IMG/VR virus record: IMGVR_UViG_3300006931_000029
Span: 160,955-224,954 of that record
Reading direction: 5' to 3' (one strand)
Length of the DNA stretch: 64,000 bases
Shown one piece after another: positions 6,011-59,727 of the stretch. Every line of letters starts with the position of its first letter. The stretch's first letter is position 1. The notes under the pieces are model-generated. The model did no database searches, had not been told where the DNA came from, and was given only the letters and a program-made list of their open reading frames with translations. The position numbers and the translations under genes are program-made.

Positions 6011-6214
6011 TTAGCCAACCATCATGAAGCCCGTGCCGAGAATCTCGTTGACTCCCTTTCCACCGGGGCAGATAAAGACTGCCGTCCAACGATCCTCGAT
6101 CGTCTTGCAAACCAGATGACGAACCGAGAGGTTCGTGAACTTCGCCAGCGCCGTGGTCAGATTCGCTTCGGTCGCATAGCTCTTAACGTTTTTGGAGGAG
6201 ATTTGGGTTGCCAT
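6011..6214 (-). CDS. Small hypothetical protein (likely leaderless start MATQISS)
   Basis: ATG at 6214 lies 6 nt after the -10 hexamer of the promoter at 6221-6249. Confidence 0.65.
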   Translation of the reverse strand: MATQISSKNVKSYATEANLTTALAKFTNLSVRHLVCKTIEDRWTAVFICPGGKGVNEILGTGFMMVG

Positions 6215-6220
6215 GAACCC

Positions 6221-6258
6221 ATACAACCCACTTTATCTGAAAATGTAAACAAAAAAGT
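6221..6258 (-). promoter_or_regulatory. Sigma70-like early promoter cassette
   Basis: T-tract-GTTTACA-N17-TTGTAT-N6-ATG. Near-identical copies at 45228-45266 and 58594-58632. Confidence 0.75.
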
Positions 6259-6288
6259 ATAACAAAAGTGAGTCTAGTTTTTTACAAT

Positions 6289-7614
6289 TCAACTGATCCT
6301 GGTGACCTTCAAGAAAGACCCAACCAAGACGTTGCCCGTGCCACTGGTTGCCTTCTTCGCGGTGAGAAACAGGTTGCACGCCGAATTGGGTGCCGTGATC
6401 AGACCACCAAACGTCACAACACCGTTCCCGACTTGTCTGATCATCGCTGTGGATTGGAAACCTTGGGCAGTGATCTGATCAACGACCCGCAGAGCATTCG
6501 CACCCAGCGTGGCCTGTGTGCCTTCCATCCATCCGTTAATGGTAGCGCCAGCGACGCTGCATTGAATACCGAACTGAGCACCTGCCGTCGACGATGATTG
6601 AGCTCCGATAAAACCGTTGAACTCGTAGACCCCGTTAGCGACTAGGGCAACGGTCGAGTCGGTGATCGTCGTGTTGACGGTGGTGTAGGCAGCAACTACG
6701 TCTACCGTTCCCCAGATGCTCGTCGCGCCTTGAAAACCCTGTGGTCCCTGAGCTCCGGTCGTTCCTTGACTGCCCGTAGTTCCGGTCGTCCCTTGGAATC
6801 CTTGCGAACCTTGAGTTCCAGTTCCTCCTTGCAAACCCTGGAATCCTTGAGCACCAGTGCCCGTCGCACCTTGGAATCCCTGGAAACCCTGGTTGCCCGT
6901 CGTGCCTGTCGCACCTTGAACTCCTTGAGAACCGGTCGAACCTCCTACTCCTTGGAATCCTTGAAAGCCCTGACTTCCTGTCGAACCTGTGGCGCCTTGC
7001 AATCCCTGTGATCCGACGCCGGTTGCACCTTGGAAACCTTGACTGCCTTGCGAACCGGTCGTGCCGGTTACGCCTTGAAAACCTTGGCGACCCTGAAATC
7101 CCTGAAAGCCTTGAGCTCCGACGTCGCCTTGAGAACCCGCGCTTCCCTGCAAACCCTGATTGCCCTGCGCCCCGGTGTTTCCAACAACGCCCTGCGATCC
7201 TTGAGAACCGACGGCTCCTTGGGCACCTGTCGCGCCCTGAGAACCTGTCGAACCACCTACTCCTTGGAAACCCTGAGCTCCGACACCAGTCAAACCTTGA
7301 AAGCCTTGGAAACCCTGGTTTCCTTGTGAACCAATCGATCCTTGAACTCCTTGTGAACCGGTCGCTCCTTGCGACCCGACTGCGCCTTGTACGCCCTGAC
7401 TGCCAGTTACGCCTTGAAAACCCTGGTTGCCTACGGCGCCTTGGAAACCCTGCAGCCCACTGGAATACGGCAGAGAATTCCAGCGCGTAACTCCGTCACC
7501 TAGCTTCCACTTGCCGGTGTCAACCTCAACGCCGAGTTCACGTTCAGCGAGAAGAGGATTGATGGCGGTGGCAAGTGCTGCCAACCCGCCACGTTGCTGC
7601 ATCTGCTGGGCCAT
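6289..7614 (-). CDS. Collagen-like fibre protein with an Mtd_N/hyaluronidase-like N-terminus and a C-terminal beta-sandwich
   Basis: LAERELGVEVDTGKWKLGDGVTRWNSLPY N-terminal domain, then about 80 Gly-X-Y triplets (GFQ, GSQ, GAT, GVQ). Confidence 0.85.
   Translation of the reverse strand: MAQQMQQRGGLAALATAINPLLAERELGVEVDTGKWKLGDGVTRWNSLPYSSGLQGFQGAVGNQGFQGVTGSQGVQGAVGSQGATGSQGVQGSIGSQGNQGFQGFQGLTGVGAQGFQGVGGSTGSQGATGAQGAVGSQGSQGVVGNTGAQGNQGLQGSAGSQGDVGAQGFQGFQGRQGFQGVTGTTGSQGSQGFQGATGVGSQGLQGATGSTGSQGFQGFQGVGGSTGSQGVQGATGTTGNQGFQGFQGATGTGAQGFQGLQGGTGTQGSQGFQGTTGTTGSQGTTGAQGPQGFQGATSIWGTVDVVAAYTTVNTTITDSTVALVANGVYEFNGFIGAQSSSTAGAQFGIQCSVAGATINGWMEGTQATLGANALRVVDQITAQGFQSTAMIRQVGNGVVTFGGLITAPNSACNLFLTAKKATSGTGNVLVGSFLKVTRIS
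6725..7460 (-). repeat. 9-bp periodic collagen-coding repeat
   Basis: Recurring ccttg/ccctg/gaaacc units on the plus strand that encode G-X-Q triplets. Confidence 0.85.
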
Positions 7615-7848
7615 TTAGAATGATCCGCCATCGATGGGTGTTGTTCCGCCGTAGTTCGTGTCCCACGTCCCGCCATCAATGTTGCCCATGGACGAGGCTT
7701 GAGCTCCTTGAGAGCCTTGAACACCTTGCGGTCCTGCCACTCCTTGAGGACCCTGCGGTCCAGAAGGAATGCCCGTAAGCGTATCGCCCGGCTGAAGGAG
7801 CTCGAGGTCACCCTGCGGGGTGAGTACGAGTGGTCTCCTCTCGGACAC
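7615..7848 (-). CDS. Small collagen-like protein
   Basis: GPQGPQGVAGPQGVQGSQGAQ with IDGG repeats. The N-terminal RRPLVL...GDLELLQPGD is shared with the neighbouring gene. Confidence 0.75.
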   Translation of the reverse strand: MSERRPLVLTPQGDLELLQPGDTLTGIPSGPQGPQGVAGPQGVQGSQGAQASSMGNIDGGTWDTNYGGTTPIDGGSF

Positions 7849-7851
7849 GCG

Positions 7852-8322: not shown

Positions 8323-8328
8323 TGGAAG

Positions 8329-8805: not shown

Positions 8806-8825
8806 TCACTACCTACCGGCTAAAA

Positions 8826-9146: not shown

Positions 9147-9154
9147 TTATGCAT

Positions 9155-9187
9155 AAAAACAGGGCGACCCGTTTCCGAGTCGCCCTG
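9155..9187 (-). terminator. Rho-independent terminator
   Basis: CAGGGCGACTCG-GAAA-CGGGTCGCCCTG-TTTTT on the minus strand, just after the stop at 9205. Confidence 0.85.
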
Positions 9188-9204
9188 GTTCAAAAACGAT
9201 CTGG

Positions 9205-9687
9205 TTAGACCGTCGGCGCGTCCGGAACGACCGGAGTAGCCGGAGCATCCGGCACCACGTCGGCCAGCGCTTGCGCAGAGGCCGACAGAGAGTTCAACGA
9301 GGAAAGGAATGCCTCGTCCGTGACGTTCGGGTCTTGAGCGTCGGCGATCAACTGGTCGATCTGCGCCTGCATGGCGGTGACCTTCGCGTTGATCTCTCCG
9401 AGAGCTTCTGCGTTCTTGGCTGCGGCTGCAGCAATGGCTGTTTTGATTTCGCTGAGTTTCATATTGATTTCTTGGATTTCCTGACGTAGTGAATTCAGGT
9501 CGTCTTTGGTTGGTGCATTCAGCAAGTGGGACCTGAACCACTCGAGAATGAAAAAGAGAGCGCCATCGCCCGTGGTAGGCAATGACACTGCGGGTCCTGG
9601 CGGACCTTGTTCTCCGCGCTCTCCTGGTTGACCCTGCGGTCCTGTGTCGCCTTTTGGTCCTGGCGGACCTGGATGGTGATCGTGCAT
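9205..9687 (-). CDS. Collagen plus coiled-coil protein
   Basis: MHDHHPGPPGPKGDTGPQGQPGERGEQGPPGP followed by a heptad helix. ATG at 9687 lies 2 nt after the upstream stop. Confidence 0.65.
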   Translation of the reverse strand: MHDHHPGPPGPKGDTGPQGQPGERGEQGPPGPAVSLPTTGDGALFFILEWFRSHLLNAPTKDDLNSLRQEIQEINMKLSEIKTAIAAAAAKNAEALGEINAKVTAMQAQIDQLIADAQDPNVTDEAFLSSLNSLSASAQALADVVPDAPATPVVPDAPTV

Positions 9688-9689
9688 GG

Positions 9690-19347: not shown

Positions 19348-20122
19348 GTCTGCGTAGAACGTAACCTGGATAGGTAAACGATTCCAGACTAAGTTATGTT
19401 TCGCTAATGTCTATCTCAACCTTGACCGTTCCGTCGGCACACTTAACCTCCATCAAACGGATCGTGCGACCTTGAAGAATGAGAATGACGAGAGTGGCAC
19501 GGCGATGGCGGTTAAAATCCCTTTCCCATGAACAGCCAGCCGATTCAACTAAGGCGCTGAGCGCTTCGTGAGCCATCGCCATCTCTTCTTTGGTAAAATC
19601 CAGTGAATCAGCCATCTTGCTCATGACGCAGATAACGTTCGAAACTTCTTCTCGTTTGCCAGTATCAACCGGAGTTTGGCCTGCGTTTCAAGATAGTGCT
19701 TGATGGTTGCAACCGTCCAACCGAAGACAGTCGCCTGTTCCCAGAGAGCCATCAAGATGTGCACGTGCTGGTTTGCATTGTGCACGGACATCCCTGAGCA
19801 GTAAAGGTTTACCTGCCGGAGAAGTTCGTTAGGATGCTCAAAGTAGTTGTCCACCTCACTCGGGTTCTTTGCGCTCTCTTCGTGCATCGTCAGACTTATC
19901 GGTAACTATCGGAGTGACCGCGATTCCATGCATGTCGATTAGCGCCACGCCATCGTCCACCATGAAGGCGTGGTCGTAGCCAGCTGCCTTCAACTTGTTA
20001 GCGATCTCGTCGAAGGCTGGTTTGCTGATCTCAAGTCTGGCGAAGGTGTGAGTGATCCTCAACATAGCGATGGACAGAACTTGGTCTGACGCGCTTGTAA
20101 ACAAAAACTTGTAGACAACGTG

Positions 20123-20610: not shown

Positions 20611-20841
20611 CTAGTCCTCAATCAATTTGCTGACAAGAGATTCGGCAGCTTTCCTGCCGGTCTTGATCTTGCGCCACTTCGATTGGGCGGGATCGTCATT
20701 GGTGAACATCACGCGCTTCACGCGGCCATCGGCCAATCGAATGCGCACGCCATCGTCTTTGTCGTGGCCGATCAAACCGACCACCTTGCCGACGCCAAAT
20801 TCTGGATGTTTCACGTCGTCACCGACTTGGACCATGAGCAT
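20611..20841 (-). CDS. SH3/Tudor-like small protein
   Basis: VGDDVKHPEFGVGKV, with C-terminal AESLVSKLIED. Confidence 0.55.
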   Translation of the reverse strand: MLMVQVGDDVKHPEFGVGKVVGLIGHDKDDGVRIRLADGRVKRVMFTNDDPAQSKWRKIKTGRKAAESLVSKLIED

Positions 20842-20879
20842 GATGACTAATTACTCTGTCAGGAAACGGGTGTAAACGC

Positions 20880-21563: not shown

Positions 21564-22057
21564 GGCTGCTTGCGTTTGCGCGTGGGTAAAACGTATCCCT
21601 GAGCTTTAGCAAAATCTCTCAGCTGGTTCGCCGCCGCTTCAATCTCTGCATCGGTCACGCCGTCGTCGGTGTCGTCCCAAATGGCGGAAATTTGTTGCTG
21701 GTAATACTCGGTGTCTGAGAAGTCTACCACCGATTCTCCGGTCTTCAAACTGTCCAGATTGACCTTGGAAAAGATACGAAATAGCTCCTCGACTGGAGGA
21801 AGTTTTCTCTTCTCCGGAGCGTTATTCGACGCCCATGCCTTCAGCTTATCGATCTCGTCGGCGCCATAAGCTTGGTCTTCGTCTTCTTGCTGAATCGAAT
21901 TCCAGTCATCGTCGTCCAGCGCCAAGATAAGGCGTTTGAGTTCGGCCTCGTCCTTGATCCTCACGCCTAACTCGATCGCCAACCGATGAGCCAAGCTCAG
22001 AATCGGATCGATGTGGTTCTCCGCAAGCAGCTTCTCGACGAGGTCTTCTGGTTTCAT
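21560..22057 (-). CDS. Acidic protein with an MKPEDLVEKLLAE N-terminus
   Basis: Shares its N-terminal motif with 13364-13633. Confidence 0.6.
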   Translation of the reverse strand: MKPEDLVEKLLAENHIDPILSLAHRLAIELGVRIKDEAELKRLILALDDDDWNSIQQEDEDQAYGADEIDKLKAWASNNAPEKRKLPPVEELFRIFSKVNLDSLKTGESVVDFSDTEYYQQQISAIWDDTDDGVTDAEIEAAANQLRDFAKAQGYVLPTRKRKQP

Positions 22058-22095
22058 GGCTGTGTTTTAACCACTTCAGCTGCGTTTTGTAAACA

Positions 22096-28753: not shown

Positions 28754-30527
28754 GGTACGAACGCCATCGTGTATGTTGCACCGCCTTCGAAGGTGATGGT
28801 TAACCCGTCCTTGGTCCTCAGTGACGACGTCACCTTCACGCCGTACATCGGCGCCAACTCCAGTACCAGCTTCTCGTTTCGTGCCATCATCTCGGGAATT
28901 GTGACCGGGTCGTCGGCCTTCGTCGCTTCGATGTGGCGGTTGACTGCTTCTCGAAGGGCTGTTACGTTTCTCTTCTGTTCGGCATCCATTAGAGAAATGA
29001 GTTGCGAAGGTACAGCTTGCGAAGCTCCTCTGAGCTGGCAACTTTCACGCACGACGGAGGACACTCAGGCGCACTGAGTCCTGCTCGCATCTGGCGACCC
29101 GCCTTACGCGCCGAGGCACGAAAACCTTTTGGCAGTTTTGGCACCTCAACCGTGACAGGTTTTCCATTACGATGCTTGAGCTTGGTGAGTTTGATTTTCA
29201 TGCCAGTTTAGTGTAGATTTCCACTTCCCATCTGTCGATTGATCCCATCGTGACTCGGATCAGGAGCTCGCCGACCTTCTCCTCCACCGTGTCTCCACGG
29301 CCACCATTCATAGCGTCCGTGTATGCCCTAGAACACGCCGACCGAATGGCCCTGATCATAGGCGCAGTGACAACTAGAGTGTGGTTCTCCAGCCTATTGA
29401 ACACCGCCTCAGCGGCTTTCTGGGATGGCGTGGATTGACTTGCTAGGTCCGGCAAAATGATCTTCATGAACGAATGACCATCCCAAAGTTCCTAAAAATG
29501 TAAACAATTTAGTGCCGCACCTGTCGTTTTCTGGCTGCGCGTATCATCTTGTGGGCGTATCCACGCAGCAAGCACGGGACTTTGCTGCCGATGTCCACGA
29601 TGAAGGTGCCAGTGGTGCCAGAACCAGCCGGATCAACGTGCACCTTCCGAACGACTGGAAACTCAGTGTGCACCAGCTTTAGCTGCACGCTCAACGGCCG
29701 TTGCAATGAGGTCAAGGGTATCCGCTCGCTCATTTTGCCAGACGCCGTTGTGCATCACTCTATTTCTCTCACGGTTAGCCAAAGCCCGAAGCTCAACGGC
29801 GAGCGCTACTCGAGGAGCATCAGCTGGGTTGAAGTGGTCGTTGGCCAAGTCACAGATTTCTTTCTTTATGGGCGTGCGGTCCAACGCCGCCTTGACCATG
29901 TCGATCTCTCTGATATACATCTTGATCAGGCGGAGCGCGTCTGTCAAATCGTTTACGACGTACGCACCAAAGGCTCCTGTCGGCCTAGATAATTTCTTGC
30001 GCAGGTCGTCGTACTCTTGTTGCAACCGTTGACAGATGTCTTTCGCCTCGTCCAACGTGATAGTTTCAGGCGAATAGGTCATAGTCCATTTGCGAGAACG
30101 AATTTGTCGACCACGGCTTGGCTGATCGTCTCCTCGTTCATCTGCTGAAGAATGACTTCCACAATCTTGGACGATAACCCTCGGTCACCGTAAATTTTGC
30201 GATAGCGTACCACGTCTGGCATCTTCGAGATGAGATTGCAAACCGAAGCAGGAACGTTGACGTCCGGATTCCCACTGGCTACGATGGCGAAGCCGTGATT
30301 CAAGTCATTCCTCCATCGGTGGGAGGACGTAGGCATCTCAGGTTTCTTCCGATGGTCAACGATCTTGCCGACCTCAATCACTGCCGCACCCTTCATGTGC
30401 TTGATATTTTCCATGGTCCAACCCGGAGGTGGATTGCCCATGAAGATCGCCTCGACCATTTCGGCGGCGGTGTCCGTAACGTGGGCTTCAACCCCACTCG
30501 GTTTGCTAGCGACGAGGATAAACATGA

Positions 30528-38155: not shown

Positions 38156-38470
38156 GTTTTGTTGGATAAAATCAGCTGAGAGCTTCGATGACGAGAACGG
38201 TTTTGCCGGCTTCGGCAGTTTTGCTCACACCTCGATCTAGTTCGGCAAGGCGCATGTACGACGGACCTTCCCACGAGTAGTAGTAGGCTCCGGTTGCATT
38301 CACCCAATCCAGAATGGCCTTGTTCCAGATGTCGGGATCGATTCCCATCCACTTGTTTTGACCAAACAACGCGTCGAGCAGAGTGCAAACGTGAACGACG
38401 GAGACGCCATCACGGGTTTCTTCAGTCACAGCTTCCACGGTAACCGTATTAACAGAGCTCATTGCCCACG

Positions 38471-38526
38471 ATTCAAACAACTTAAGGGAAAATGTAAACA
38501 AAAATGTTTACGGACTTGGAGGTTCT
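38471..38526. promoter_or_regulatory. Divergent promoter region with an inverted repeat
   Basis: Minus strand: TTTACA-N16-TTGAAT-N8-ATG(38462). GTAAACA-AAAA-TGTTTAC inverted repeat. Plus strand: GTTCT 7 nt before GTG 38534. Confidence 0.65.
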
Positions 38527-38533: not shown

Positions 38534-38914
38534 GTGCATTTCGTCACCATTTACACTAAGGTTGGCCCGAAGCTATCGAACTGGCTGACGGCGAAAGGTG
38601 TGACCGACGACGAGTGGTTGAAGTGGTGTCTTCGAGACCGAGATTCGAAGGACTTCACCGCAATTGTCGATGAGCTGGAAGAGGCAGCAACAGCTGCCGA
38701 GGTCTTAGTTTCGCCGATCCTTGAGGTGGAACGCTACATCATGGAATCCACGGAGAAAGTCGAACTGCTTATTGAACGCAGAAAGCTGGTATTAACGTCG
38801 AGACCGAAGCACTACGCTAGCTCGGAACTCATTTCGAGATTCATCTCAAAGTGGTTTGAGATTTTGGACAAAGAAGCCGCTAGCGATCTTTCCGCCACAC
38901 GACCCACTTCTTAA
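38534..38914 (+). CDS. Hypothetical protein
   Basis: Plus-strand ORF behind a GTTCT motif. Its 3' end overlaps the sigma-factor gene. Confidence 0.55.
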   Translation: MHFVTIYTKVGPKLSNWLTAKGVTDDEWLKWCLRDRDSKDFTAIVDELEEAATAAEVLVSPILEVERYIMESTEKVELLIERRKLVLTSRPKHYASSELISRFISKWFEILDKEAASDLSATRPTS

Positions 38915-39788
38915 GCTGGTTGATAGCGTCCTGCCGTATCTGACAGATACGCGATTCAGTGACCTTGAACTCCTCAGCTATCTGCCACAGTCGCATGCCC
39001 TCGAAGTAGTTCATCCGCAAGATGGTTTGCCATTGGTCGGGTAACCGGCTGATGTGGGTTTTCAGCAAGCCAACCAGCTCTGCTTCCTGCATTGAGTCTC
39101 TTGCAAGAACGTCCTGGGTGTCTGCCAGAGACTCGTGAAGAGATACGCCGTGTTCCTCACTTTCGCTGATGAAATCGATAGACGTGAACGTTTGAGGACG
39201 GGCTTCTTCGACCATTTTTCTGTACTCGGTTGGCGTCAAGTTCATCTCGGCCATGATCTCGGTCGCCGTCGGGTCTCGTTGCAGTTTTTGCGTCAACGTT
39301 GCGACAACTTCTTTTAGAACCCGGTTTCTAGCTCGAGCTCGACGAGGAACCCAATCCATCCTCCTAAGCTCGTCTAGGATAGCTCCTCGAATTCTCATGG
39401 AAGCGTACCCTTTGAACGAAGAAGCTCTGGCAGCGTCGTACTTCTTCGCTGCCGCCATCAACCCGGTTATTCCTACGCTGTGCAGGTCGTCTGCGTCGAT
39501 GTGTGCAGGAAGATTTAGTTTGATCCGGTCCACGACCTGTCGGACGAGGTACATGTGTTGCACAAGAAAATCTCCGCTAGTTGCCTCCGCGGTTACTTCT
39601 TGCCTCTTCCTCTTAGGTTTAACGATCAGCTCGTGAGGAGCTTGGTTCACCTGCTCCCTAGGAACGACCGGTTGAAAAATGTCAAGGCGGTGCCGAGGCG
39701 CCACCATGATCGGTGGACCGTCGACGACAACTTGAATAATCTCGAAAGCGTCGTCCTCGACTGTGAGTAGGACGAGCGTTGAGTTCAC
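38880..39788 (-). CDS. RNA polymerase sigma factor, FliA/WhiG family
   Basis: DDLHSVGITGL..AAKKYD...FKGYASMRIRGAILDELRRMDWVPR (region 2), region 3, and IAEEFKVTESRICQI (region 4). Confidence 0.9.
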   Translation of the reverse strand: MNSTLVLLTVEDDAFEIIQVVVDGPPIMVAPRHRLDIFQPVVPREQVNQAPHELIVKPKRKRQEVTAEATSGDFLVQHMYLVRQVVDRIKLNLPAHIDADDLHSVGITGLMAAAKKYDAARASSFKGYASMRIRGAILDELRRMDWVPRRARARNRVLKEVVATLTQKLQRDPTATEIMAEMNLTPTEYRKMVEEARPQTFTSIDFISESEEHGVSLHESLADTQDVLARDSMQEAELVGLLKTHISRLPDQWQTILRMNYFEGMRLWQIAEEFKVTESRICQIRQDAINQLKKWVVWRKDR

Positions 39789-41976: not shown

Positions 41977-43526
41977 ACCGGCGCAAGAACAAAAACTAGC
42001 GATCCAGGTTTCAACCCAGACTATGAAGTTTCATCGGATAAATCAAGGATGTTCAACGCTTAACCAATAGGTATGAATGGAACCATTGCTTACCTGATGG
42101 AACTAACGCTACGATGATCTATCGCACTCCCCCTACGTTCGAAAGACTAATTGGCAACGCGCACAGACCCGCTCAAGACTTCTATGAAGCGTGGCGTGCG
42201 AGTTCCAGTATGTCGATCTCCTCGCGGAGACGAAAATACTCCGATGTCCACTCCTTGGAGCCTCTCAACACCCCTATCGAATTGATAGAGCACTGGTGCA
42301 GAGAGCACAATGGGCGGAGATAGGGTTCGACAGTACAACCGTTCGCTCCCATGAACGGTAGGTTAGGGTGATTGGTTGGTTGGAGAGTAATGCCGAAGCG
42401 CGTCTGTGCGTAATCTTTGGCCATCTGGCAATACTCTCGGTCGCAACAACGGTTGGGCCGAATCTCCTCGATGATGTTGCAGTGCGGCGTGCCGCATTTG
42501 GCACAGGTATGATCGGCCATCTTTCGCCATAGAGCGATCAGCTCTGGCGTCTCTTGTCTAAGAGGTTTGAGAATCGGTGTGAGGGATTCGGACGACAATG
42601 CCTGGTCCGACGGCTTGCTGGTCGTCGATCTTGACGCCGATGGAACGGAGGAATTGCCGGTTTTTCTCGGCCTGTGGGAATCTGGTTTTGTGTCCGCTGC
42701 GGAGGGCATAGGTGGTTTCGACCAGCAGGTCAGTAAGGGTTTTTTCGAGCTCGGTCATCATGGCGCTTTCTTGAGAGAATTCTTGACGTCGCGCCGAAAG
42801 CCTTCGCCCTTATCGCACTGGAAGTTGCGACCATTGCCCATGCTGTACGACGTGAGACAAGTCGAGCAGCGGAATGATCCGCCTTTCGTGCCCTTGGCGT
42901 ACGGGATAAACTCCCATGTGTGACCGTTAACGTCGGCTGGTTTTTCGTTAGGAAACATTGGAGAGAGCGGTTCGGAGTGCCTTGGTTACTTCTACGGCAG
43001 AAGGGTACCCGAAAAGGCGTAGTTGATCTCGAACAGCGACAGTTGGTTCGTAAGCCGTTCCGAGAAGTCTTGGACCACCGACTGACATTGGGACTTGAAG
43101 ACCGGAGACGATTGCTCCTAGGTTGGCGATGATCTTTTCCTGCTCTGGTGTGAATTGTTTAGGCATGAGAATGATTGGTCCGCGAGCTGCGATCCGTCCG
43201 CAACCTTCGCAAGGATGAGTCAGGTGTGATTTGCAACCTCGATGGTGGCACGGTTCACCGTCTTTTAGATGAGACCGCATGCTGCTTCAAGTTCGTGGCC
43301 TTCTCGAACTGAGCGCTCGTGCAGCGCTGTTTCGTCTTTCGTGGCTGGACGCATTTTATCGAAGTCGAACAACTTGCTGCCGGCCGGTTGGACTACGACG
43401 CCGGGAACCCCATCTAGGCGAAACGTTTCGATTCCCAGCGCCATCAAAACGTTGTCGACTCCGACCACGTCAACCAACGACATCAGGCGTTCTTCTTCGG
43501 TCGGGATGTATCGTTCCATGACGGCC

Positions 43527-43562
43527 ATCCTACACTTCAGTTGTATTTTGTAAACAAAAAAG
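43527..43562 (-). promoter_or_regulatory. Sigma70-like early promoter
   Basis: TTTACA-N16-TAGGAT-N7-ATG(43519). Confidence 0.7.
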
Positions 43563-44687: not shown

Positions 44688-45221
44688 TTATTTCTTGGAG
44701 CGTTCCTGTTCCCAAAGGGCGGTGACGCGATCGATTTCAGATTGAGCGTGAGGAGTTCCGCCGGTGTTCATCTCGAGGTACCATTGAAGCACGTCCGCGT
44801 ACGACGAAAGACTTCCGACTTGAAAGATCAAGCTGGTGCGGCGAGCGATGGTATCGAAATCGTCGTAGTCGAGGAACGAGTGACCGAAGACAGGGATTTC
44901 TCCGCGCAGCATCTTGCGAACAGCCGTGAGACGCTGGAGACCATCGACGAGGTACATCGGTCCCTCAAAATTGTTTTGCCAACCGCGGCAGTTGAAGATG
45001 ATGGTACGGCCAGACTCGCCGCCGCGGATCAGAAACTCGCAGAAGGCGATCTGTTGTTCGCGAGACCAGACGTGGCCACGCTGAAATTCAGGTTCGAGGA
45101 TAAGCGGGCAGGTCCGCCGACCTTCGTCAGACCAACGACCGATCGTGAATTCAACTTCAGCGACCGTCACGTCGATGCGGTAGTGGGCTTGTTTGAGTTG
45201 AGGGATGGCCGAAAGTTTCAT
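44688..45221 (-). CDS. DUF262 (ParB-like) domain protein
   Basis: PEFQRGHVWS, LVDGLQRLTA, MNTGGTPH. Confidence 0.85.
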   Translation of the reverse strand: MKLSAIPQLKQAHYRIDVTVAEVEFTIGRWSDEGRRTCPLILEPEFQRGHVWSREQQIAFCEFLIRGGESGRTIIFNCRGWQNNFEGPMYLVDGLQRLTAVRKMLRGEIPVFGHSFLDYDDFDTIARRTSLIFQVGSLSSYADVLQWYLEMNTGGTPHAQSEIDRVTALWEQERSKK

Positions 45222-45227
45222 GCGAAC

Positions 45228-45293
45228 ATTCAACCCACTTTATTTGAAAATGTAAACAAAAAAGTGTACGGCTCCGCTACTTTATTTTTTACA
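45228..45293 (-). promoter_or_regulatory. Early promoter cassette with an inverted repeat
   Basis: TTTACA-N17-TTGAAT-N6-ATG(45221). 45251-45265 and 45279-45293 form a 13/15 inverted repeat. Confidence 0.75.
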
Positions 45294-46777: not shown

Positions 46778-47643
46778 GGTTGGAGATTGACGATTCGGTA
46801 GGTTTGTCCAGCGGAGTCTTTCCACTCTTCGGGACCAACCCACGTCGACTTGATTTTGATTTTGCGGATGTTGCCTTGTGCGTCTCTGCGAAACCGTTCA
46901 GATTTCAGCATGCGTTCGTGCGCTCGGCGGGTATGCGCTATGCGAGTGATTTCTCTGCTAGGGTCTTGGTTGACCGTTGCGCCACGAACAACCATCTTAT
47001 CGTTCGCTGCGTGCGTCCGATGAATTACTGTGTAGTGCTCCCGAGCTTTTGCCCACTGAACGGATTTTCCGGGGCGGGTCGGTTCAACCTTGGCGACGAA
47101 ATTACCAGGGCGAAGGTACTCAAGCGAAATAGATTCAAGGCAGACGATGAGAATCGTGACGGCGCGATCAAGTGCGGCTTGGGCCGTCGGTTCAAGAATC
47201 TGAGAACCGTATGGACCTTTCGTGATCTCCTTGCCGTTGTCATGGCGGAATGCCCGACTGTTCCAGTCAGCGACGCCAGGTTTAGGCGTGGCGTTGAGGA
47301 ACACCTTCAGGATCATTTTCTTTCCATCGATGTTGTTGGTCACGACAGCCACGGTTCGAAGCATCGCGTCGTGCCGTTCGCAGACCCCGTAGTGCGTTCC
47401 CCACTTAGTCCGAATCCAGTACCGGAAAGATTGGAATGGCGTTTCAAAAACCTTTCCGAAGAAGTTCAGCGTAGTGCTGAGCCGCGCATCCATCTGCTCC
47501 TTCGTCTCGTTGCCGAAGTCATACGTGATCAACGGCCACGTCTTGAAATGCTCTAGCTGCTTCATCGTCTCGGCCCGACCTGCGTCAGGGTAGGCGATGT
47601 CGATTGCTCGAACAAGCTCTTCGTTAATGGTGATCGGATTCAC
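46774..47643 (-). CDS. Hypothetical protein
   Basis: 289 aa with a basic C-terminal HTRRAHERML...WVGP. First gene after an early promoter. Confidence 0.65.
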   Translation of the reverse strand: MNPITINEELVRAIDIAYPDAGRAETMKQLEHFKTWPLITYDFGNETKEQMDARLSTTLNFFGKVFETPFQSFRYWIRTKWGTHYGVCERHDAMLRTVAVVTNNIDGKKMILKVFLNATPKPGVADWNSRAFRHDNGKEITKGPYGSQILEPTAQAALDRAVTILIVCLESISLEYLRPGNFVAKVEPTRPGKSVQWAKAREHYTVIHRTHAANDKMVVRGATVNQDPSREITRIAHTRRAHERMLKSERFRRDAQGNIRKIKIKSTWVGPEEWKDSAGQTYRIVNLQP

Positions 47644-47650
47644 TTAGACC

Positions 47651-47685
47651 ACCATACCGTTGGGACGGATTTTGTAAACAAAAAT
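47651..47685 (-). promoter_or_regulatory. Sigma70-like early promoter
   Basis: TTTACA-N16-TATGGT-N7-GTG(47643). Confidence 0.7.
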
Positions 47686-49217: not shown

Positions 49218-49433
49218 TCATGTGAGGAACGACTTTGAAGGAACGAACTTCACTACTGATCGGGCCTGAACCTTGACGATTTGACCGCTCGGCAAACGCT
49301 GGTTGCCGGCTTTCTTCTTCACGATCTTGAAGGTGCCGAAACCGCGGATTGACAGCTTTCCGTTCTGGCGAACGGATTGCCGGATGTCACTCAGAAAATT
49401 CTGCAGATTTGGTGCAAGAGGCTTGACGATCAT
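49218..49433 (-). CDS. HU/IHF-family DNA-binding protein
   Basis: LSIRGFGTFKIV...GQIVKVQARSVVKFVPSK. Confidence 0.8.
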   Translation of the reverse strand: MIVKPLAPNLQNFLSDIRQSVRQNGKLSIRGFGTFKIVKKKAGNQRLPSGQIVKVQARSVVKFVPSKSFLT

Positions 49434-49439
49434 GAAGCC

Positions 49440-49477
49440 ATCCTACACTTTGGTTGGAATTTGTAAACAAAAAAGTG
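49440..49477 (-). promoter_or_regulatory. Sigma70-like early promoter
   Basis: TTTACA-N16-TAGGAT-N6-ATG(49433). Confidence 0.7.
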
Positions 49478-49496
49478 TTGGCCTATTTCAGCCAAA

Positions 49497-53678: not shown

Positions 53679-54567
53679 CGTCTTTTGCTTCTGGGAGCTC
53701 TTCGACTATGGTTTGCAGAAGGTCTTGGTCTTGCTGTTGGCGTTGCTCCATCTCGCGCCACGCGGACATGTCTAGAAACTGCTTCACTCCGTTTTCAACC
53801 AGAGCTATAAGTGTCTTCGGCTCGAGAGCGTCTAGTTCCCAACTGCTATCGCCGAATTGTTCTCGGTATGCCGCGGCTCGGCTGTCATCCATCTTCACCG
53901 GGTTTTCTGGGAGTTGATGGCGCTGGACTTGGTCGTAATTCAACGCGAGTCGAACGACGTCAACTGGGCCGTCGCTGTAGCGCTCGAGTCTATCTCTTAC
54001 GTCACGAGACATGTCCAAACCGGACGGGTCGTGGTCACCCAAGTAGAGCACATGAACGTCTTTTCCTTCGACATCGCGCTGCGACTGAATGAACTTTCCT
54101 CGCGAGTACATCGATGACACGGACGAGTAACCTTTGTTGGCCGTAAAAGCAACTCCCCATTTTTCGCAGACCGGCGCCAGCACGCCTTCCAGGGCTTGCT
54201 TCTCAACCATGACCTCGACGTAATGCTGTTGCTGTTTCCACCGAGCTAAACGAAAATGTTCAGTCAAGTGCTGCAGATACGACTTGAGACTCTTATATTC
54301 CGGAATCGAGTGAGTCACGCGTCCGCGGTCTTCGATGGCGTCCCAATCTAGCATGCCGCCTTCTCTTGATTCAGAGATAACGGTAGCGAACGCTTCGTAG
54401 TTTTGCGGCGTATTTTTCATCCAGTTCTTCGCCACAAACTGGTAGTAAAGCTGGCGAACCGTAAGCTTGAAACCCTGTGAGAGATAGTCTTGGCACAAGC
54501 CGTCGGCTTTCGCGATAATGTCGATCGCTCGTTCACCAAACTTCTTCTCTCTGAAGCATTCTTTCAT
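53668..54567 (-). CDS. Toprim-domain protein (Topo VI-A/Spo11/DUF2399-like)
   Basis: LTVRQLYYQ, VEVMVEK, KGYSS, LYLGDHDPSGLDM, WELDAL. Confidence 0.75.
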   Translation of the reverse strand: MKECFREKKFGERAIDIIAKADGLCQDYLSQGFKLTVRQLYYQFVAKNWMKNTPQNYEAFATVISESREGGMLDWDAIEDRGRVTHSIPEYKSLKSYLQHLTEHFRLARWKQQQHYVEVMVEKQALEGVLAPVCEKWGVAFTANKGYSSVSSMYSRGKFIQSQRDVEGKDVHVLYLGDHDPSGLDMSRDVRDRLERYSDGPVDVVRLALNYDQVQRHQLPENPVKMDDSRAAAYREQFGDSSWELDALEPKTLIALVENGVKQFLDMSAWREMEQRQQQDQDLLQTIVEELPEAKDDES

Positions 54568-54577
54568 GGACGGGTTT

Positions 54578-54612
54578 AGGCTAGCGTTGTCCTTGAGTTT
54601 GTAAACAAAAAT
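54578..54612 (-). promoter_or_regulatory. Sigma70-like early promoter heading the Toprim-to-PurA-like operon
   Basis: TTTACA-N16-TAGCCT-N10-ATG(54567). Confidence 0.7.
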
Positions 54613-56401: not shown

Positions 56402-56411
56402 CCATGGCTGT

Positions 56412-57335
56412 TTAGTTGAGAAGCAGGTCGACGGCGGCCGTCTGCAGGCCAATACCGTAACCGATCATGTTGGTCTCGAAGCGGGATTCGGCAGCACGCT
56501 TAGCGCGAACCGGTTTCTCGTGCGAGAGGAACTGCGTGACCGCGTTTAACGCGTCGGCGCGGGTCTTACCCTCGTTGCCGATACCGTTGCGGAAGAGCTC
56601 GAACACCTTTGTGCGGGTGTTGGTGACACGTTTGCCTTCGCCGGGCATCCAAACCTCGACGAATTTCTTCGCGTCGCCTTCGGACATCTTGACGGACTGG
56701 AGTTGGTTGTAGACCTTCTGGAACTCCTGCGCATGCTTGTCGGCGAGACCGACGATGCGGTGAGCTTGTTCAATTTTGTCCTTGAAGTTTTTCGTGTGAC
56801 GGATAACGACCATCGATTTGGCCTCACCGAGGGCGGCCGACAGCGTGTTCATGCAAACCACGCGAGTGGAGACGAAGCGAACTGAAACCGGTTTGGTGCC
56901 GTCGTGACTGAGATAAACGAGGAAGTACTGCTTGAGTCCGTCGTTTTTGCCAGAGAGAAAGTACTCCTTCTTGAGGCTGGCGAGGAACCAAACGATCTTG
57001 CCGTTGCGGAGTGAACCGGCCGTCTCGTAGACTGCGTCGTCACCGATAACCGGATCGAGGATGTTGAGACCGTCGACGTTCTGGATCGGCGTGTAGCGGG
57101 TGCCCACGATTCCGAGGGGCTCGCCAGTGTCAGCGCGAACGATTCCGAAGTGGTCGGGGAAGGATTTGCCGTCAGCAACGCGGATGCGTTTCTTTGAAAC
57201 TTCCCAGTTCAGTTTGGCCTGAGCGAGAGCGGCTTCCGCCGTAAGAGCACCTTGGACAACGGTGCCGAGTTTGTGCCACGGGACGATACCGTTAGCAGAG
57301 ACCATGTGGTCATTTTCCTGGAGTTCGTGAGCCAT
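56412..57335 (-). CDS. DUF932/DUF945 family protein
   Basis: MAHEL, PWHKLG, YTPIQN, ETAGSLRNGK.VW, SHDGT, RVVCMNTL, IRHT. Confidence 0.9.
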   Translation of the reverse strand: MAHELQENDHMVSANGIVPWHKLGTVVQGALTAEAALAQAKLNWEVSKKRIRVADGKSFPDHFGIVRADTGEPLGIVGTRYTPIQNVDGLNILDPVIGDDAVYETAGSLRNGKIVWFLASLKKEYFLSGKNDGLKQYFLVYLSHDGTKPVSVRFVSTRVVCMNTLSAALGEAKSMVVIRHTKNFKDKIEQAHRIVGLADKHAQEFQKVYNQLQSVKMSEGDAKKFVEVWMPGEGKRVTNTRTKVFELFRNGIGNEGKTRADALNAVTQFLSHEKPVRAKRAAESRFETNMIGYGIGLQTAAVDLLLN

Positions 57336-57388
57336 ATTGATTCGAGTTTTTAACGTTTAACAGACTTGATTTGCTTTCAACGAAAGTA

Positions 57389-57425
57389 AGCCTAAACTTT
57401 CTTTCAGCAATGTAAACAAAAAAGT
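57389..57425 (-). promoter_or_regulatory. Sigma70-like early promoter
   Basis: TTTACA-N16-TAGGCT, followed by a leader of about 50 nt. Confidence 0.7.
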
Positions 57426-57606
57426 GCGAACTATTTTTCGGTATGTTCTTGGCTAGATTGGATTTCCCTGATTTCCGTGTCGTGGGTAAAATCAGCTCTA
57501 GCACAGGCCAGAAGCAACTTTACGATCATGAGAAGCACCAGACAGATGGCGAATAGGCCGAGAAAGTTGATGAACCTCTGTTCGCTAGGCGAGTATTCTC
57601 CGGGGC

Positions 57607-58128: not shown

Positions 58129-58130
58129 GG

Positions 58131-58586
58131 TTAAACTCTAGTTGCGCATTCGGGTCCGAGACCCAGTTCGATACTCTCTGGAACAGTGAGCTTACGCCCA
58201 CAACGGCCGCAGCGACCCTCGTGCCACAATTCGCAGTTCGGAAGCTCCTGACCTGCGAGAACTCGCTCGACTACCCACCTAGCTGCCTTAGCGGATGGCG
58301 CGTCCGGCGTAATCTTCGATCGGACGCCGTGCGAGTAAGTCCCATTGGCGAAAATCGTGCCGACAAACTGGTATGAATGCTCGTTGTCCGAACCGTTAAG
58401 GACTGAGACGAAGTGCGGCGATTGAGCGGTCGGTTTGCGAACCTTCAGCGTGAATCGCGTCTGGGTTTTACCTGACCGGACCGTGAAAGTAGCGTTACCA
58501 GCGAGCAGAAACTGCTTTAAGTTTGCCGGAGCAACTTGAGCAGGAGCAGCGGGGTCCAGTCCAGGTAGGGAAGGAGTGTCAACCAT
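58131..58586 (-). CDS. DUF6011 domain protein
   Basis: LAGNATFT, HEGRCGRCGRKLTVPESIELGLGPECA. Confidence 0.85.
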   Translation of the reverse strand: MVDTPSLPGLDPAAPAQVAPANLKQFLLAGNATFTVRSGKTQTRFTLKVRKPTAQSPHFVSVLNGSDNEHSYQFVGTIFANGTYSHGVRSKITPDAPSAKAARWVVERVLAGQELPNCELWHEGRCGRCGRKLTVPESIELGLGPECATRV

Positions 58587-58593
58587 AAAAACC

Positions 58594-58632
58594 ATTCAAC
58601 CCACTTTGTTCTGAAATGTAAACAAAAAAGTG
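58594..58632 (-). promoter_or_regulatory. Early promoter cassette
   Basis: TTTACA-N17-TTGAAT-N7-ATG(58586). Confidence 0.75.
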
Positions 58633-58684
58633 TAGGTAATTTTAGGTGTCTTTCGGCTCAGCTGGAAGTAGGTTCTTCTAGACT

Positions 58685-59404
58685 ATGGCTGACTACCCGG
58701 AGCTTCTGGCACCCATTCCAGTTTCATTCCTTACCGACTTCGTCCGAGACTTTCAAAAGAACCGGCTAGATGGGCCGCTGTCTCAAGCAGCCAACGATTT
58801 AGTTCGAGACGTTCTATTTCGAGCTTCACTCGAAGACGCCGTTGAAACTAGGATCGAGCTCAATAACCGGATTCAACAGGAGGAAAGAGCGCCAACTGAC
58901 GAAGAATTGCGGCAAGAAGAGGCAGACAAGCATGCCGATCCAATTCTCGATGTCCTCGATAACGTGGTCGAGGGAATCCTCAAAGGCGAGAGTCTCGAAA
59001 AGCATCACGACCAAATTCGCAAGTACATCCTGAACCAGCAGGATCGGTCTGAGTTAATCGCCAATCTTCTTCTCACAAAGGACTACCGCCGACTCGTCTC
59101 CTTCGTGAAGGTTCGAGATGTCCTCGAACAACGGCTACTAGAGGCAGCGACAAGAGCGGATTTGAACATCTCCGAGATGATGGCGATGATGACGATCGTC
59201 AATGCAGGTGCCGACAAGCTGTCGAACAAGGTGGAAGCCGGAGCGTCCAACATCTCTGACGTAATTGCTCTCATGACGAAGGTTGACTACACGCTGCAGG
59301 AAAACGATTCGAAGATGAAAGAGAAATTGAAGAAGACGTCGCCTTCTGGACGAGAAATTGTTCGTCGCGTCATCCACAAGCTCAAGAAGGTTTCAGAGGA
59401 ATAG
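58685..59404 (+). CDS. Helical hypothetical protein
   Basis: 239-aa ORF with GTTCT 8 nt upstream. Confidence 0.7.
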   Translation: MADYPELLAPIPVSFLTDFVRDFQKNRLDGPLSQAANDLVRDVLFRASLEDAVETRIELNNRIQQEERAPTDEELRQEEADKHADPILDVLDNVVEGILKGESLEKHHDQIRKYILNQQDRSELIANLLLTKDYRRLVSFVKVRDVLEQRLLEAATRADLNISEMMAMMTIVNAGADKLSNKVEAGASNISDVIALMTKVDYTLQENDSKMKEKLKKTSPSGREIVRRVIHKLKKVSEE

Positions 59405-59666
59405 TCTTCCTCAGCGCCGTGAGTGCCGACGTAGGAGACATGAACAGGGTGCCGCCACGCTTACCTGGACGTCTCCATCTCCACTGGTAAATGGAATCGG
59501 CAGGATGCACCGGTTCGGGTGTCCATCCGGCTTTCTTTAGTTCAGCCGCCGTCTCTAGGTCGCCATCGTAGATGATTTTCGAGGCAGATGCTTGAAGCTG
59601 TTCGAAATAAGACTCCCGCTGGAGCGGCGTCATCTTCGCAATTTCCTTCCACGGTTTGTCCGGCAT
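59382..59666 (-). CDS. Hypothetical protein
   Basis: Start MPDKPW behind TTTACG-N16-TAAGCT-N5-ATG. Confidence 0.55.
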   Translation of the reverse strand: MPDKPWKEIAKMTPLQRESYFEQLQASASKIIYDGDLETAAELKKAGWTPEPVHPADSIYQWRWRRPGKRGGTLFMSPTSALTALRKTIPLKPS

Positions 59667-59727
59667 TCTCCAGCTTACCCCGCCTTGGAAAAACGTAAAC
59701 AAAAAATTTCCTCGGTAGATAGGCAAC

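What the first reader, a model, noticed from the sequence alone, without database searches (positions are those of the whole stretch)
6214..59699. Dispersed sigma70-type promoters positioned for leaderless mRNAs
Seen: T-tract-GTTTAC(A/G) at 6244, 38493, 43549, 45251, 47673, 49462, 54600, 57411, 58617 and 59694, with weaker copies at 2324, 20096, 29499, 32730 and 35998. In the ten clear copies, a T(A/T)nnnT hexamer follows after 16-17 nt (TTGTAT, TTGAAT x3, TAGGAT x2, TATGGT, TAGCCT, TAGGCT, TAAGCT). In eight of them a start codon lies only 5-8 nt further on, with no Shine-Dalgarno sequence. Established: sigma70 initiates about 6-8 nt after the -10 element. Inference: early transcripts begin at the start codon. 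This also corrects several ORF-track starts (6214, 38462, 43519, 45221, 58586, 59666).
Basis: partly seen in the sequence, partly recalled or inferred. Interest (0 to 1): 0.6.

Follow-up and report, generated by a model that had tools for sequence, protein, structure and literature searches.

The report
Phage early promoters fused to start codons
A 225-kb T4-like soil phage, probably of Verrucomicrobia, places T4-style early promoters so close to start codons that transcripts should begin at the AUG, and it uses no Shine-Dalgarno sites at all.

Summary
The window is the last 64 kb of a 224,954-bp T4-like jumbo phage from soil metagenomes.

All listed motifs lie on the minus strand. The anatomy is a T-tract, GTTTAC(A/G), a 16-17 nt spacer, a weak T(A/T)nnnT hexamer usually followed by GG, then 5-8 nt to ATG or GTG.

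- In the whole genome, 23 of 36 such sites have an ORF-opening start codon 27-32 nt after the -35 element (mode 29). Chance gives 5.6% (P about 1e-20).
- With the A of ATG as +1, GTTTAC sits at -36..-31, the published T4 early-promoter geometry.
- Two relatives (65-69% capsid identity) keep the architecture with canonical extended -10 boxes (TGnTATATT, TGaTATAGT) exactly 6 nt before ATG.

So sigma-A-type promoters placed for leaderless mRNAs are well supported by sequence and comparison. They are unproven by RNA, because no RNA run was listed.

- Absence of Shine-Dalgarno is uninformative, because no gene in this phage has one. The putative Opitutaceae host loci lack it too.
- 'Early' is inferred, not shown.

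New findings: a FliA-like sigma gene in the window, absent from relatives, and a second motif class (TAnTTA, 4 nt, then ATG/GTG) before virion genes.

The parts
6212..6256 (-). Class-1 promoter fused to a start codon. T-tract 6251-6256, GTTTACA 6244-6250, 17-nt spacer, TTGTAT 6221-6226, 6-nt gap, ATG 6212-6214. ORF 6011-6214 (67 aa).
   Evidence: An in-frame stop lies 21 nt upstream. The only alternative start is the TTG inside the -10 hexamer.
20063..20107 (-). Weaker class-1 copy. T-tract plus GTTTACA 20096-20102, poor -10 (TTCTGT), ATG 20063-20065 at d=30. ORF 19856-20065 (69 aa).
20839..20877 (-). Hybrid site. GTTTACA 20871-20877 without a T-tract, 17-nt spacer, TAATTA 20848-20853 (the class-2 hexamer), 6-nt gap, ATG 20839-20841. 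ORF 20611-20841 (76 aa).
22055..22094 (-). GTTTACA 22088-22094 without a T-tract, 17-nt spacer, TTAAAA, 7-nt gap, ATG 22055-22057. ORF 21560-22057 (165 aa).
   Evidence: An in-frame stop lies 12 nt upstream.
29465..29507 (-). Weak copy. GTTTACA 29499-29505, unclear -10, ATG 29465-29467 at d=31. ORF 29198-29467 (89 aa).
38460..38504 (-). Class-1 promoter. T-tract, GTTTACA 38493-38499, 16-nt spacer, TTGAAT 38471-38476, 8-nt gap, ATG 38460-38462. ORF 38172-38462 (96 aa).
38880..39788 (-). Context gene: FliA/WhiG (sigma-28) family sigma factor, 302 aa, with regions 2, 3 and 4.
   Evidence: Pfam. TIGR02479 scores 211.6 bits against a cut-off of 189.6. Absent from five related phages. Best named cellular homologues are Opitutaceae at 52-57% identity. 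No sigma-28 consensus promoter occurs in the phage.
43517..43561 (-). Class-1 promoter. T-tract, GTTTACA 43549-43555, 16-nt spacer, TAGGAT 43527-43532, 7-nt gap, ATG 43517-43519. ORF 43265-43519 (84 aa). No other class-1 site lies between it and the sigma gene downstream on this strand.
   Evidence: The gene caller chose the ATG inside the -10 box (43528).
45219..45263 (-). Class-1 promoter. T-tract, GTTTACA 45251-45257, 17-nt spacer, TTGAAT 45228-45233, 6-nt gap, ATG 45219-45221. ORF 44688-45221 (177 aa, GmrSD_N domain).
47641..47684 (-). Class-1 promoter. T-tract, GTTTACA 47673-47679, 16-nt spacer, TATGGT 47651-47656, 7-nt gap, GTG 47641-47643. ORF 46774-47643 (289 aa).
   Evidence: The in-frame stop lies directly before the GTG.
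49431..49474 (-). Class-1 promoter. T-tract, GTTTACA 49462-49468, 16-nt spacer, TAGGAT 49440-49445, 6-nt gap, ATG 49431-49433. ORF 49218-49433 (71 aa, short HU-like protein). A small hairpin at 49478-49495 precedes the T-tract.
   Evidence: The TAG of the -10 box is an in-frame stop.
54565..54611 (-). Class-1 promoter. T-tract, GTTTACA 54600-54606, 16-nt spacer, TAGCCT 54578-54583, 10-nt gap, ATG 54565-54567. The predicted leader is about 3-4 nt. ORF 53668-54567 (299 aa, phrog_6247 'DNA topoisomerase').
   Evidence: The PHROG alignment begins at residue 1.
57389..57423 (-). Class-1 promoter that is not leaderless. T-tract, GTTTACA 57411-57417, 16-nt spacer, TAGGCT 57389-57394. The first ORF-opening ATG is at 57333-57335 (DUF932, 307 aa), giving a predicted leader of about 47 nt.
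58584..58629 (-). Class-1 promoter. T-tract, GTTTACA 58617-58623, 17-nt spacer, TTGAAT 58594-58599, 7-nt gap, ATG 58584-58586. ORF 58131-58586 (151 aa, DUF6011).
   Evidence: The gene caller chose the ATG at 58595, which overlaps the -10 box.
59664..59706 (-). Class-1 promoter. T-tract, GTTTACG 59694-59700, 16-nt spacer, TAAGCT 59672-59677, 5-nt gap, ATG 59664-59666. ORF 59382-59666 (94 aa).

Best explanation
These are the early-type promoters of a distant T4-like jumbo phage, read by the host's primary sigma (sigma-A/sigma-70 type) RNA polymerase.

Each promoter has:
- an A/T-tract in the UP-element position (T-rich in this phage);
- a strictly conserved -35 element, GTTTAC(A/G);
- a 16-17 nt spacer ending in a GTG/TG-like stretch;
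- a weak -10 hexamer T(A/T)nnnT;
- a G-rich discriminator.

The start codon lies 6-7 nt after the -10 hexamer. That is where a sigma-70-type holoenzyme starts RNA synthesis, on a purine preceded by a pyrimidine.

The first gene of each such transcription unit is therefore made from an mRNA that begins with its AUG or GUG, or has a leader of at most about 2 nt. It would be translated by the leaderless route.

Downstream genes of the same units are translated without Shine-Dalgarno pairing, as in the probable host lineage (Opitutaceae, Verrucomicrobiota).

Shown here: the motif anatomy, its excess over chance, the fixed distance to start codons, and its conservation in relatives. Inferred: the transcription start, the identity of the sigma factor, early timing, and the mode of ribosome loading.
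For: 1. Fixed distance. In this genome (G000), 23 of 36 T-tract+GTTTACR sites have an ORF-opening ATG/GTG 27-32 nt after the -35 element (mode 29), against 5.6% at random (P 1.7e-20). In relative G004 the count is 21 of 30 (P 1.3e-19).

2. T4 geometry. With d=29 and +1 at the A of ATG, GTTTAC occupies -36..-31. That is the position reported for T4 and T4-like early promoters, which also carry an A/T-rich UP-like tract and sit before small novel ORFs and tRNA genes (PMC1524935). The phage is T4-like: gp20 portal, gp23 capsid protein, gp21 protease, sheath, UvsX-like RecA.

3. Relatives. G004 (65% capsid identity) has TTTTTGTTTACA, then TGgTATATT. G003 (69%) has AAATAAATGTTTACA, then TGaTATAGT. 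In both, ATG follows the -10 box after 6 nt, less often 7, whether the spacer is 16 or 17. So the start codon is placed relative to the -10 box. In G003, 29 of 73 GTTTACR sites fit.

4. Conserved pairs. Three orthologous gene pairs between G000 and G004, at 37-39% protein identity, both keep the promoter-ATG fusion. One is the NAD-dependent DNA ligase.

5. Start codons. They are ATG in 28 of 32 fitting sites, and the base at -1 is C in 17 of 32. In-frame stops or starts buried in the -10 box exclude longer ORFs at many sites. An independent gene caller agrees at five starts.

6. The phage's own sigma is not needed. The FliA-like sigma is absent from G001-G005, two of which (G003, G004) clearly share the promoter class. 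No class-1 site lies between the 43549 promoter and the sigma gene downstream on the same strand. No sigma-28 consensus exists in the genome.

7. Gene content fits an early class: DNA ligase, two helicases, a topoisomerase-like protein, an HU-like protein, the tmRNA gene (the tRNA array lies downstream on the same strand) and many small ORFs.
Against: - No RNA evidence exists: no sequencing run of RNA type was listed for this phage.
- The -10 hexamers of this phage are degenerate. Four of the ten clear window copies have TT rather than TA. A generic sigma-70 scan recognises only three of the sites and shows no overall enrichment.
- The -35 element is unusually strict, with no one-mismatch copies at the same spacing. 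That could point to a dedicated factor.
- The T-tract does not match the A-rich proximal UP consensus.
- About a third of the sites are followed by leaders or RNA genes.
- Relative G002 shows the architecture only weakly (11 of 151 GTTTACR sites).
- The host, its sigma-A specificity and its ability to translate leaderless mRNA are unknown. No phage IF3 or bS21 gene was found that might tune translation initiation.
Confidence: 0.75

Rival explanations
1. The promoters are real and leaderless, but they are read by a phage-directed holoenzyme. That could be the phage's FliA-like sigma, a -35-binding activator, or a modified alpha subunit. They would then be a middle class rather than host-sigma-A early promoters.
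For: The window encodes a complete sigma-28-family protein. GTTTACA is invariant, with no degenerate copies. The -10 boxes in this phage are weak.
Against: Five relatives lack any Sigma70_r2 gene above threshold, yet G003 and G004 use the same promoters. The relatives' boxes match the general TGnTATAAT consensus. No sigma-28-type promoter is present. The sigma gene lies downstream of a class-1 promoter on the same strand, with no other class-1 site between.
Confidence: 0.12
2. The promoters are real, but the transcripts are not functionally leaderless. Either transcription starts a few nucleotides before the ATG, or the genes are mainly translated from read-through polycistronic RNA by the same Shine-Dalgarno-independent mechanism as internal genes. 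The tight spacing would then reflect genome compaction.
For: No gene in this phage uses Shine-Dalgarno, so internal initiation without it clearly works. Gaps of 8-13 nt occur at some sites. One orthologue in G004 has a leader of about 38 nt.
Against: Compaction alone does not predict a modal gap of exactly 6 nt from the -10 box in three genomes, nor the ATG bias (88-93%, against 71% at coupled internal starts).
Confidence: 0.08
3. The repeated cassette acts mainly as a recombination module, like the PeSL promoter/terminator cassettes of T4-like phages. Its position next to start codons would be a by-product of gene shuffling.
For: Several copies (6244, 45251, 58617, and genome 160290) share about 35 of 45 positions. 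PeSLs are described in hyperplastic regions of T4-like phages (PMC2839356, PMC4122927).
Against: Strong stem-loops precede only 1 of 36 sites here and 3 of 30 in G004. This role does not exclude promoter function and does not explain the exact -10-to-ATG spacing.
Confidence: 0.05

Closest known systems
Early promoters of T4 and T4-like phages (host sigma-70 dependent)
   Same: GTTTAC at -36..-31, an A/T-rich tract just upstream, a GT/TG-rich stretch before the -10 box, many copies dispersed before small novel ORFs and before tRNA genes, in a phage with T4 core genes (PMC1524935).
   Different: From my own knowledge, T4 early mRNAs have leaders with Shine-Dalgarno sites. Here the start codon sits at the predicted +1 and no Shine-Dalgarno exists anywhere. 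The upstream tract is T-rich in this phage (A-rich in relative G003). The -10 boxes are degenerate in this genome.
Leaderless middle/late mRNAs of Thermus phage phiYS40
   Same: A lytic phage makes most transcripts of a temporal class without a leader (PMC3594737).
   Different: In phiYS40 it is the middle/late class. From my own knowledge, those promoters lack a -35 element, and the host phylum (Deinococcus-Thermus) uses leaderless genes widely (39% in PMC3160421). Here the promoters have a strong -35 element, look like an early class, and sit in a T4-like phage of a different, Shine-Dalgarno-scarce lineage.
Lambda PRM-cI leaderless transcript
   Same: A sigma-70 promoter whose transcript begins with the AUG of the first gene (PMC10491246 abstract).
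   Different: That is a single regulatory gene of a temperate phage. Here it is dozens of sites per genome.
'-10 region adjacent to ORF' architecture of Deinococcus-Thermus and Actinobacteria
   Same: A TANNNT-type box a few nucleotides before the start codon, used as the computational signature of leaderless genes (PMC3160421, PMC12340547, PMC4007540).
   Different: That is a host-genome property in Shine-Dalgarno-using phyla. Here it is a phage clade in which all other genes also lack Shine-Dalgarno.
PeSL promoter/terminator cassettes of T4-like phages
   Same: Repeated early-promoter cassettes in variable regions (PMC2839356, PMC4122927).
   Different: Most copies here have no terminator stem-loop. 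A role in shuffling was not tested.

Membership tests
Sigma-70/sigma-A type promoter | A -35 hexamer close to TTGACA and a -10 hexamer TAnnnT, separated by 16-18 nt | tested here: met
   TTTAC(A/G) matches 4-5 of 6 positions; the spacer is 16-17 nt. The -10 box is TAnnnT in 6 of the 10 clear window copies and TTnnnT in 4. Relatives have TATATT or TATAGT with TGn upstream.
Sigma-70/sigma-A type promoter | Initiation by holoenzyme carrying the primary sigma factor | not testable with these tools
   Only indirect evidence: relatives without any detectable sigma-70-family gene share the class.
T4-type early promoter | GTTTAC at -36..-31 relative to the transcription start, with an A/T-rich tract upstream | tested here: inconclusive
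   The sequence is present, and the position is exact if +1 is the A of ATG (d=29). The transcription start itself was not measured.
T4-type early promoter | Carried by a T4-like phage, before early-type genes and tRNA genes | tested here: met
   T4 core genes are present. Sites lie before the ligase, two helicases, the tmRNA gene (with the tRNA array downstream on the same strand) and small ORFs.
T4-type early promoter | Expression in the first minutes of infection | not testable with these tools
   There is no cultured host and no RNA run was listed.
Leaderless mRNA | The 5' end of the primary transcript coincides with the start codon | not testable with these tools
   No RNA run was listed. 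The claim follows from geometry only.
Leaderless mRNA | A -10 box about 6-7 nt upstream of an ATG/GTG that opens the ORF | tested here: met
   The gap is 5-8 nt in 8 of the 10 clear window copies. The modal gap is 6 in G003 and G004.
Leaderless mRNA | No usable upstream start codon or ribosome-binding site | tested here: met
   In-frame stops lie within the promoter at 9 or more genome sites. There is no Shine-Dalgarno, but this holds for every gene of the phage, so it does not discriminate.
Sigma-28 (FliA) dependent promoter | TAAA, 15 nt, then GCCGATAA | tested here: not met
   The genome has 0 matches to the consensus and 1 to a relaxed form.

The most novel reading that the evidence does not exclude
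A whole clade of T4-like jumbo phages of Shine-Dalgarno-less Verrucomicrobia may express the first gene of nearly every transcription unit as a leaderless mRNA.

This would cover early units, through sigma-A-type promoters fused to ATG. It would also cover late units, through a second element, TAnTTA placed exactly 4 nt before ATG/GTG, which precedes virion genes.

Promoter-start-codon fusion would then replace the ribosome-binding site as the main way to mark operon-first genes in this phage-host system.
Probability: 0.4. Interest if true: 0.7.

Novelty: new variant of a known kind. Interest (0 to 1): 0.55.

Why it matters
Leaderless translation in phages is documented for single genes such as lambda cI and for the middle/late genes of Thermus phage phiYS40. 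I did not find it described for T4-like phages or for an early, -35-containing promoter class.

- It would be a clean natural case in which the conserved T4 early-promoter design was re-tuned for a host that does not use Shine-Dalgarno pairing.
- It offers sequence-defined test substrates for leaderless initiation in Verrucomicrobia, a phylum with almost no molecular genetics.
- It also matters for annotation. Gene callers place some starts inside the -10 box (43528, 58595, and the ORF-track starts 6226 and 45233). Promoter-aware start calling would correct first genes of operons across this widespread soil and freshwater phage clade, which has about 60 contigs at 60-82% capsid identity.

Tried and rejected
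- **RNA evidence.** The search for sequencing runs listed no RNA run.
- **Cultured relatives.** There is no DNA match to cultured phages. The capsid protein is at most 31% identical to any cultured phage.
- **289-aa gene.** Its relatives in viral contigs: none found.
- **GmrSD_N gene.** Its relatives are unrelated phages that use Shine-Dalgarno sites and lack the promoter.
- **Host from the DNA ligase.** Only a 33% match to a Sulfurimonas MAG, which is uninformative.
- **T4 late promoter.** TATAAATA is absent.
- **T-tract as terminator tail.** Rejected: strong hairpins at only 1 of 36 and 3 of 30 sites.
- **One-mismatch -35 copies.** None at the leaderless spacing.
- **Sigma-28 promoters.** None.
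- **Phage-encoded bS21 or IF3.** None in five genomes.
- **gp55-like late sigma.** Only marginal hits (E 2e-4 to 6e-3) to G004 9243-10355 and its G000 orthologue 98776-99792. This remains open.
- **TAG recoding**, suggested by a tRNA with anticodon CTA. TAG ends 35 of 272 called genes, with no excess of coding-like read-through. No other genetic code was used.
- **PurZ.** The adenylosuccinate-synthase-like gene scores far below the PurZ cut-off.
- **Gene-context look-ups.** Two failed because the exact products are not on record.

Full report
**What the window is.** The window is bases 160,955-224,954 of a 224,954-bp virus record with direct terminal repeats. It has 53% G+C. It is found in soil and rhizosphere assemblies.

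The phage is a distant member of the T4 superfamily. It has a gp20-type portal, a gp23-type capsid protein, a gp21-type prohead protease, a sheath and a UvsX-like RecA. Its capsid protein is at most 31% identical to that of any cultured phage. About 60 metagenomic contigs carry capsid genes at 60-82% identity, several of 200-238 kb.

Outside the window the phage carries about 35 tRNA genes and a tmRNA gene. Nearly all of the window up to 59.7 kb is a run of about 100 mostly small minus-strand genes.

**Check of the observation.** All quoted sites exist, all on the minus strand. GTTTACR is three times more frequent than in shuffles (30 against 10.1 +/- 2.9).

Eight have ATG or GTG 5-8 nt further on. 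The exceptions are 54600 (gap of 10 nt) and 57411 (leader of about 47 nt before a DUF932 gene).

Of the weaker copies, 20096 and 29499 fit the spacing; 2324, 32730 and 35998 do not. Two fitting copies without a T-tract were missed, at 22088 and 20871.

**Beyond chance, genome-wide.** The genome holds 36 T-tract+GTTTACR sites. In 23 of them an ATG/GTG that opens an ORF of at least 45 codons lies 27-32 nt after the -35 element. The counts are 11 at 29 nt, 5 at 30 and 3 at 28. Only 5.6% of random positions do this (P 1.7e-20).

- Copies with one mismatch in GTTTACA and the same spacing do not exist.
- The T-tract is not a terminator tail, apart from one or two sites.
- After the -10 hexamer the sequence is usually GG.
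- The base before the start codon is C in 17 of 32 fitting sites, and the start codon is ATG in 28 of 32.
- At nine or more sites an in-frame stop lies inside the promoter. For example, the TAG of TAGGAT precedes the HU-like gene at 49433. At others the only upstream 'starts' are the TTG or ATG inside the -10 box. These are the starts that mechanical ORF lists and gene callers picked.

**Why this is a promoter, and which kind.** If the A of ATG is +1 and the distance is 29, GTTTAC occupies -36..-31. Nolan et al. report exactly this for T4 and five T4-like phages. They also report an A/T-rich UP-like tract upstream, a GT-rich stretch before -12, and a location before small novel ORFs and tRNA genes (PMC1524935).

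The strongest evidence comes from relatives.
- G004 (230 kb, complete, 65% capsid identity) has 30 T-tract sites. Of these, 21 have a start codon at 27-32 nt (P 1.3e-19). Its -10 region is a textbook extended -10 box, TGgTATATT. The gap to ATG is 6 nt (10 sites) or 7 nt (6 sites), whether the spacer is 16 or 17.
- G003 (223 kb, 69%) has AAATAAATGTTTACA, 16 nt ending in TGa, TATAGT, 6 nt, then ATG. There, 29 of 73 GTTTACR sites fit.
- G002 shows the pattern only weakly (11 of 151).

So the element between GTTTACA and the start codon is a -10 box, and the start codon is positioned relative to it. It sits at the distance where sigma-70-type enzymes start RNA synthesis. The box has drifted to T(A/T)nnnT in this phage. 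Three orthologous pairs between G000 and G004 keep the fusion at 37-39% protein identity, one being the NAD-dependent ligase.

**Which sigma factor.** The window itself encodes a 302-aa FliA/WhiG-family sigma at 38880-39788. It is unlikely to read these promoters, for four reasons.
- It has no homologue in the five related genomes searched, which also show no Sigma70_r2 match above threshold. G003 and G004 nonetheless share the promoter class.
- The genome has no TAAA-N15-GCCGATAA site.
- No class-1 site lies between the 43549 promoter and the sigma gene downstream on the same strand.
- The relatives' boxes fit the general primary-sigma consensus.

'Early' remains an inference from T4 analogy and gene content. 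The genes concerned are the ligase, two helicases, a topoisomerase-like protein, an HU-like protein, the tmRNA gene and many small ORFs.

**Shine-Dalgarno.** It is not informative here. Upstream of 273 called genes, G is depleted, and Shine-Dalgarno-like words are no more frequent than inside genes (18% against 23%). None of 58 translationally coupled starts shows a Shine-Dalgarno signal. The only context signal is C at -1 (43-47%).

**Host lead.**
- The best named cellular homologues of the FliA-like sigma are all 'Opitutaceae bacterium', at 52-57% identity. Atlas look-alike clusters are Verrucomicrobiota and Bdellovibrionota.
- Two cellular loci around such fliA genes also lack Shine-Dalgarno sites. 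One is from a named Opitutaceae MAG. They have C at -1 in 17 of 22 and 20 of 25 starts.
- Some Verrucomicrobia are listed as Shine-Dalgarno-scarce in PMC10783764.

This makes Opitutaceae (Verrucomicrobiota) the best host guess. It rests on one acquired gene plus the start-codon context.

**A second motif class.** A hexamer TAnTTA, often followed by G, lies a fixed 4 nt (less often 5-7) before ATG or GTG.
- G003: 32 sites at exactly 4 nt, and 48 of 85 sites at 3-8 nt.
- G000: 30 of 69 sites. G004: 25 of 60. G002: 33 of 142.
- Only about 30% of the sites use the motif's TAG as the stop codon of the upstream gene.
- Where the downstream genes can be named, they are virion genes: a head-tail adaptor and tail fibres.
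- The canonical T4 late box TATAAATA is absent. T4's box lies at -13..-6.

This is probably the late-promoter class of the clade, again abutting start codons. An RNA-processing or translation signal is not excluded. Three copies lie in the window (hexamers at 20848-20853, 22745-22750 and 36409-36414). The first combines with a GTTTACA at the class-1 spacing.

**Limits.** No RNA run was listed, so no transcription start was observed. The host is not cultured. Gene calls are my own crude ones, plus those stored with a near-identical Logan contig.

**Verdict.** The absence of Shine-Dalgarno adds no support, and early timing is an inference. This is a new variant of known kinds: T4-type early promoters combined with a leaderless architecture.

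Noticed in passing
window 38880-39788 (-): FliA/WhiG (sigma-28) family sigma factor, 302 aa. It is absent from five related phages. Its closest named cellular homologues are Opitutaceae at 52-57% identity. No sigma-28-type promoter occurs in the phage, so it may act on host (flagellar?) genes. It is the best host clue.
   Followed up: yes
genome-wide; in the window, hexamers at 20848-20853, 22745-22750 and 36409-36414 (-): Second motif class: TAnTTA(G), then 4 nt (range 3-8), then ATG/GTG. It occurs at 30 of 69 sites here and 48 of 85 in relative G003. It lies before the head-tail adaptor and tail-fibre genes. Only about 30% of sites use its TAG as the upstream stop. It is probably the late-promoter class, also abutting start codons.
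   Followed up: partly
whole genome (G000) and loci L175, L176: No Shine-Dalgarno signal before any gene class, including 58 coupled starts. C is preferred at -1. The same context appears in two Opitutaceae-type loci.
   Followed up: yes
L042:14203-20000 and L043:1-2830 (genome 54.2-62.8 kb, -): An array of about 35 tRNA genes plus a tmRNA gene (tag peptide ending ...ELRLAA). A class-1 promoter at genome 62912 lies about 46 nt before the tmRNA.
   Followed up: partly
L046:12581-12656 (+) (genome 132581-132656): A tRNA with anticodon CTA, which would read UAG. TAG still ends 35 of 272 called genes, and read-through shows no coding excess. So there is no sign of recoding. A TATTTA-N4-ATG site starts directly after this tRNA's 3' end.
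   Followed up: partly
L042:12566-14128 (-) (genome 52566-54128): A Ro60/TROVE plus VWA protein downstream of a class-1 promoter, with a 45-72 nt leader and a weak tRNA-like element just upstream (genome 54203-54275). Possibly a Y-RNA-like partner.
   Followed up: no
window 50138-51469 (-): A divergent adenylosuccinate-synthase-like gene. The PurA model scores 190 bits (cut-off 402) and the PurZ model only 40 bits (cut-off 300). Its function is unclear, and nothing indicates a 2-aminoadenine genome.
   Followed up: partly
window 60254-64000 (+), continuing at the start of the record: A giant PA14/PKD protein (1783 aa in a near-identical contig) runs off the end of the record. It probably continues in the ORF at genome 183-1715, so the record is circularly permuted across this gene.
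   Followed up: no
window 6289-7614 (-) and 9690-10583 (-): A collagen-repeat protein with an Mtd_N (major tropism determinant N-terminal) domain, and a PA/collagen/Ig-domain protein. Both are possible receptor-binding proteins inside the 'early' block. No diversity-generating retroelement was looked for.
   Followed up: no
window 49218-49433 (-): The HU-like protein has only 71 aa and matches positions 25-85 of the 90-position Pfam model. An in-frame TAG inside the promoter rules out a longer form.
   Followed up: partly
window 6244, 45251, 58617 and genome 160290 (-): Four promoter copies share about 35 of 45 positions (ACACTTTTTTGTTTACATTT...AAAGTGGGTTGnATG). They resemble the repeated PeSL cassettes of T4-like phages, but without a stem-loop.
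   Followed up: partly
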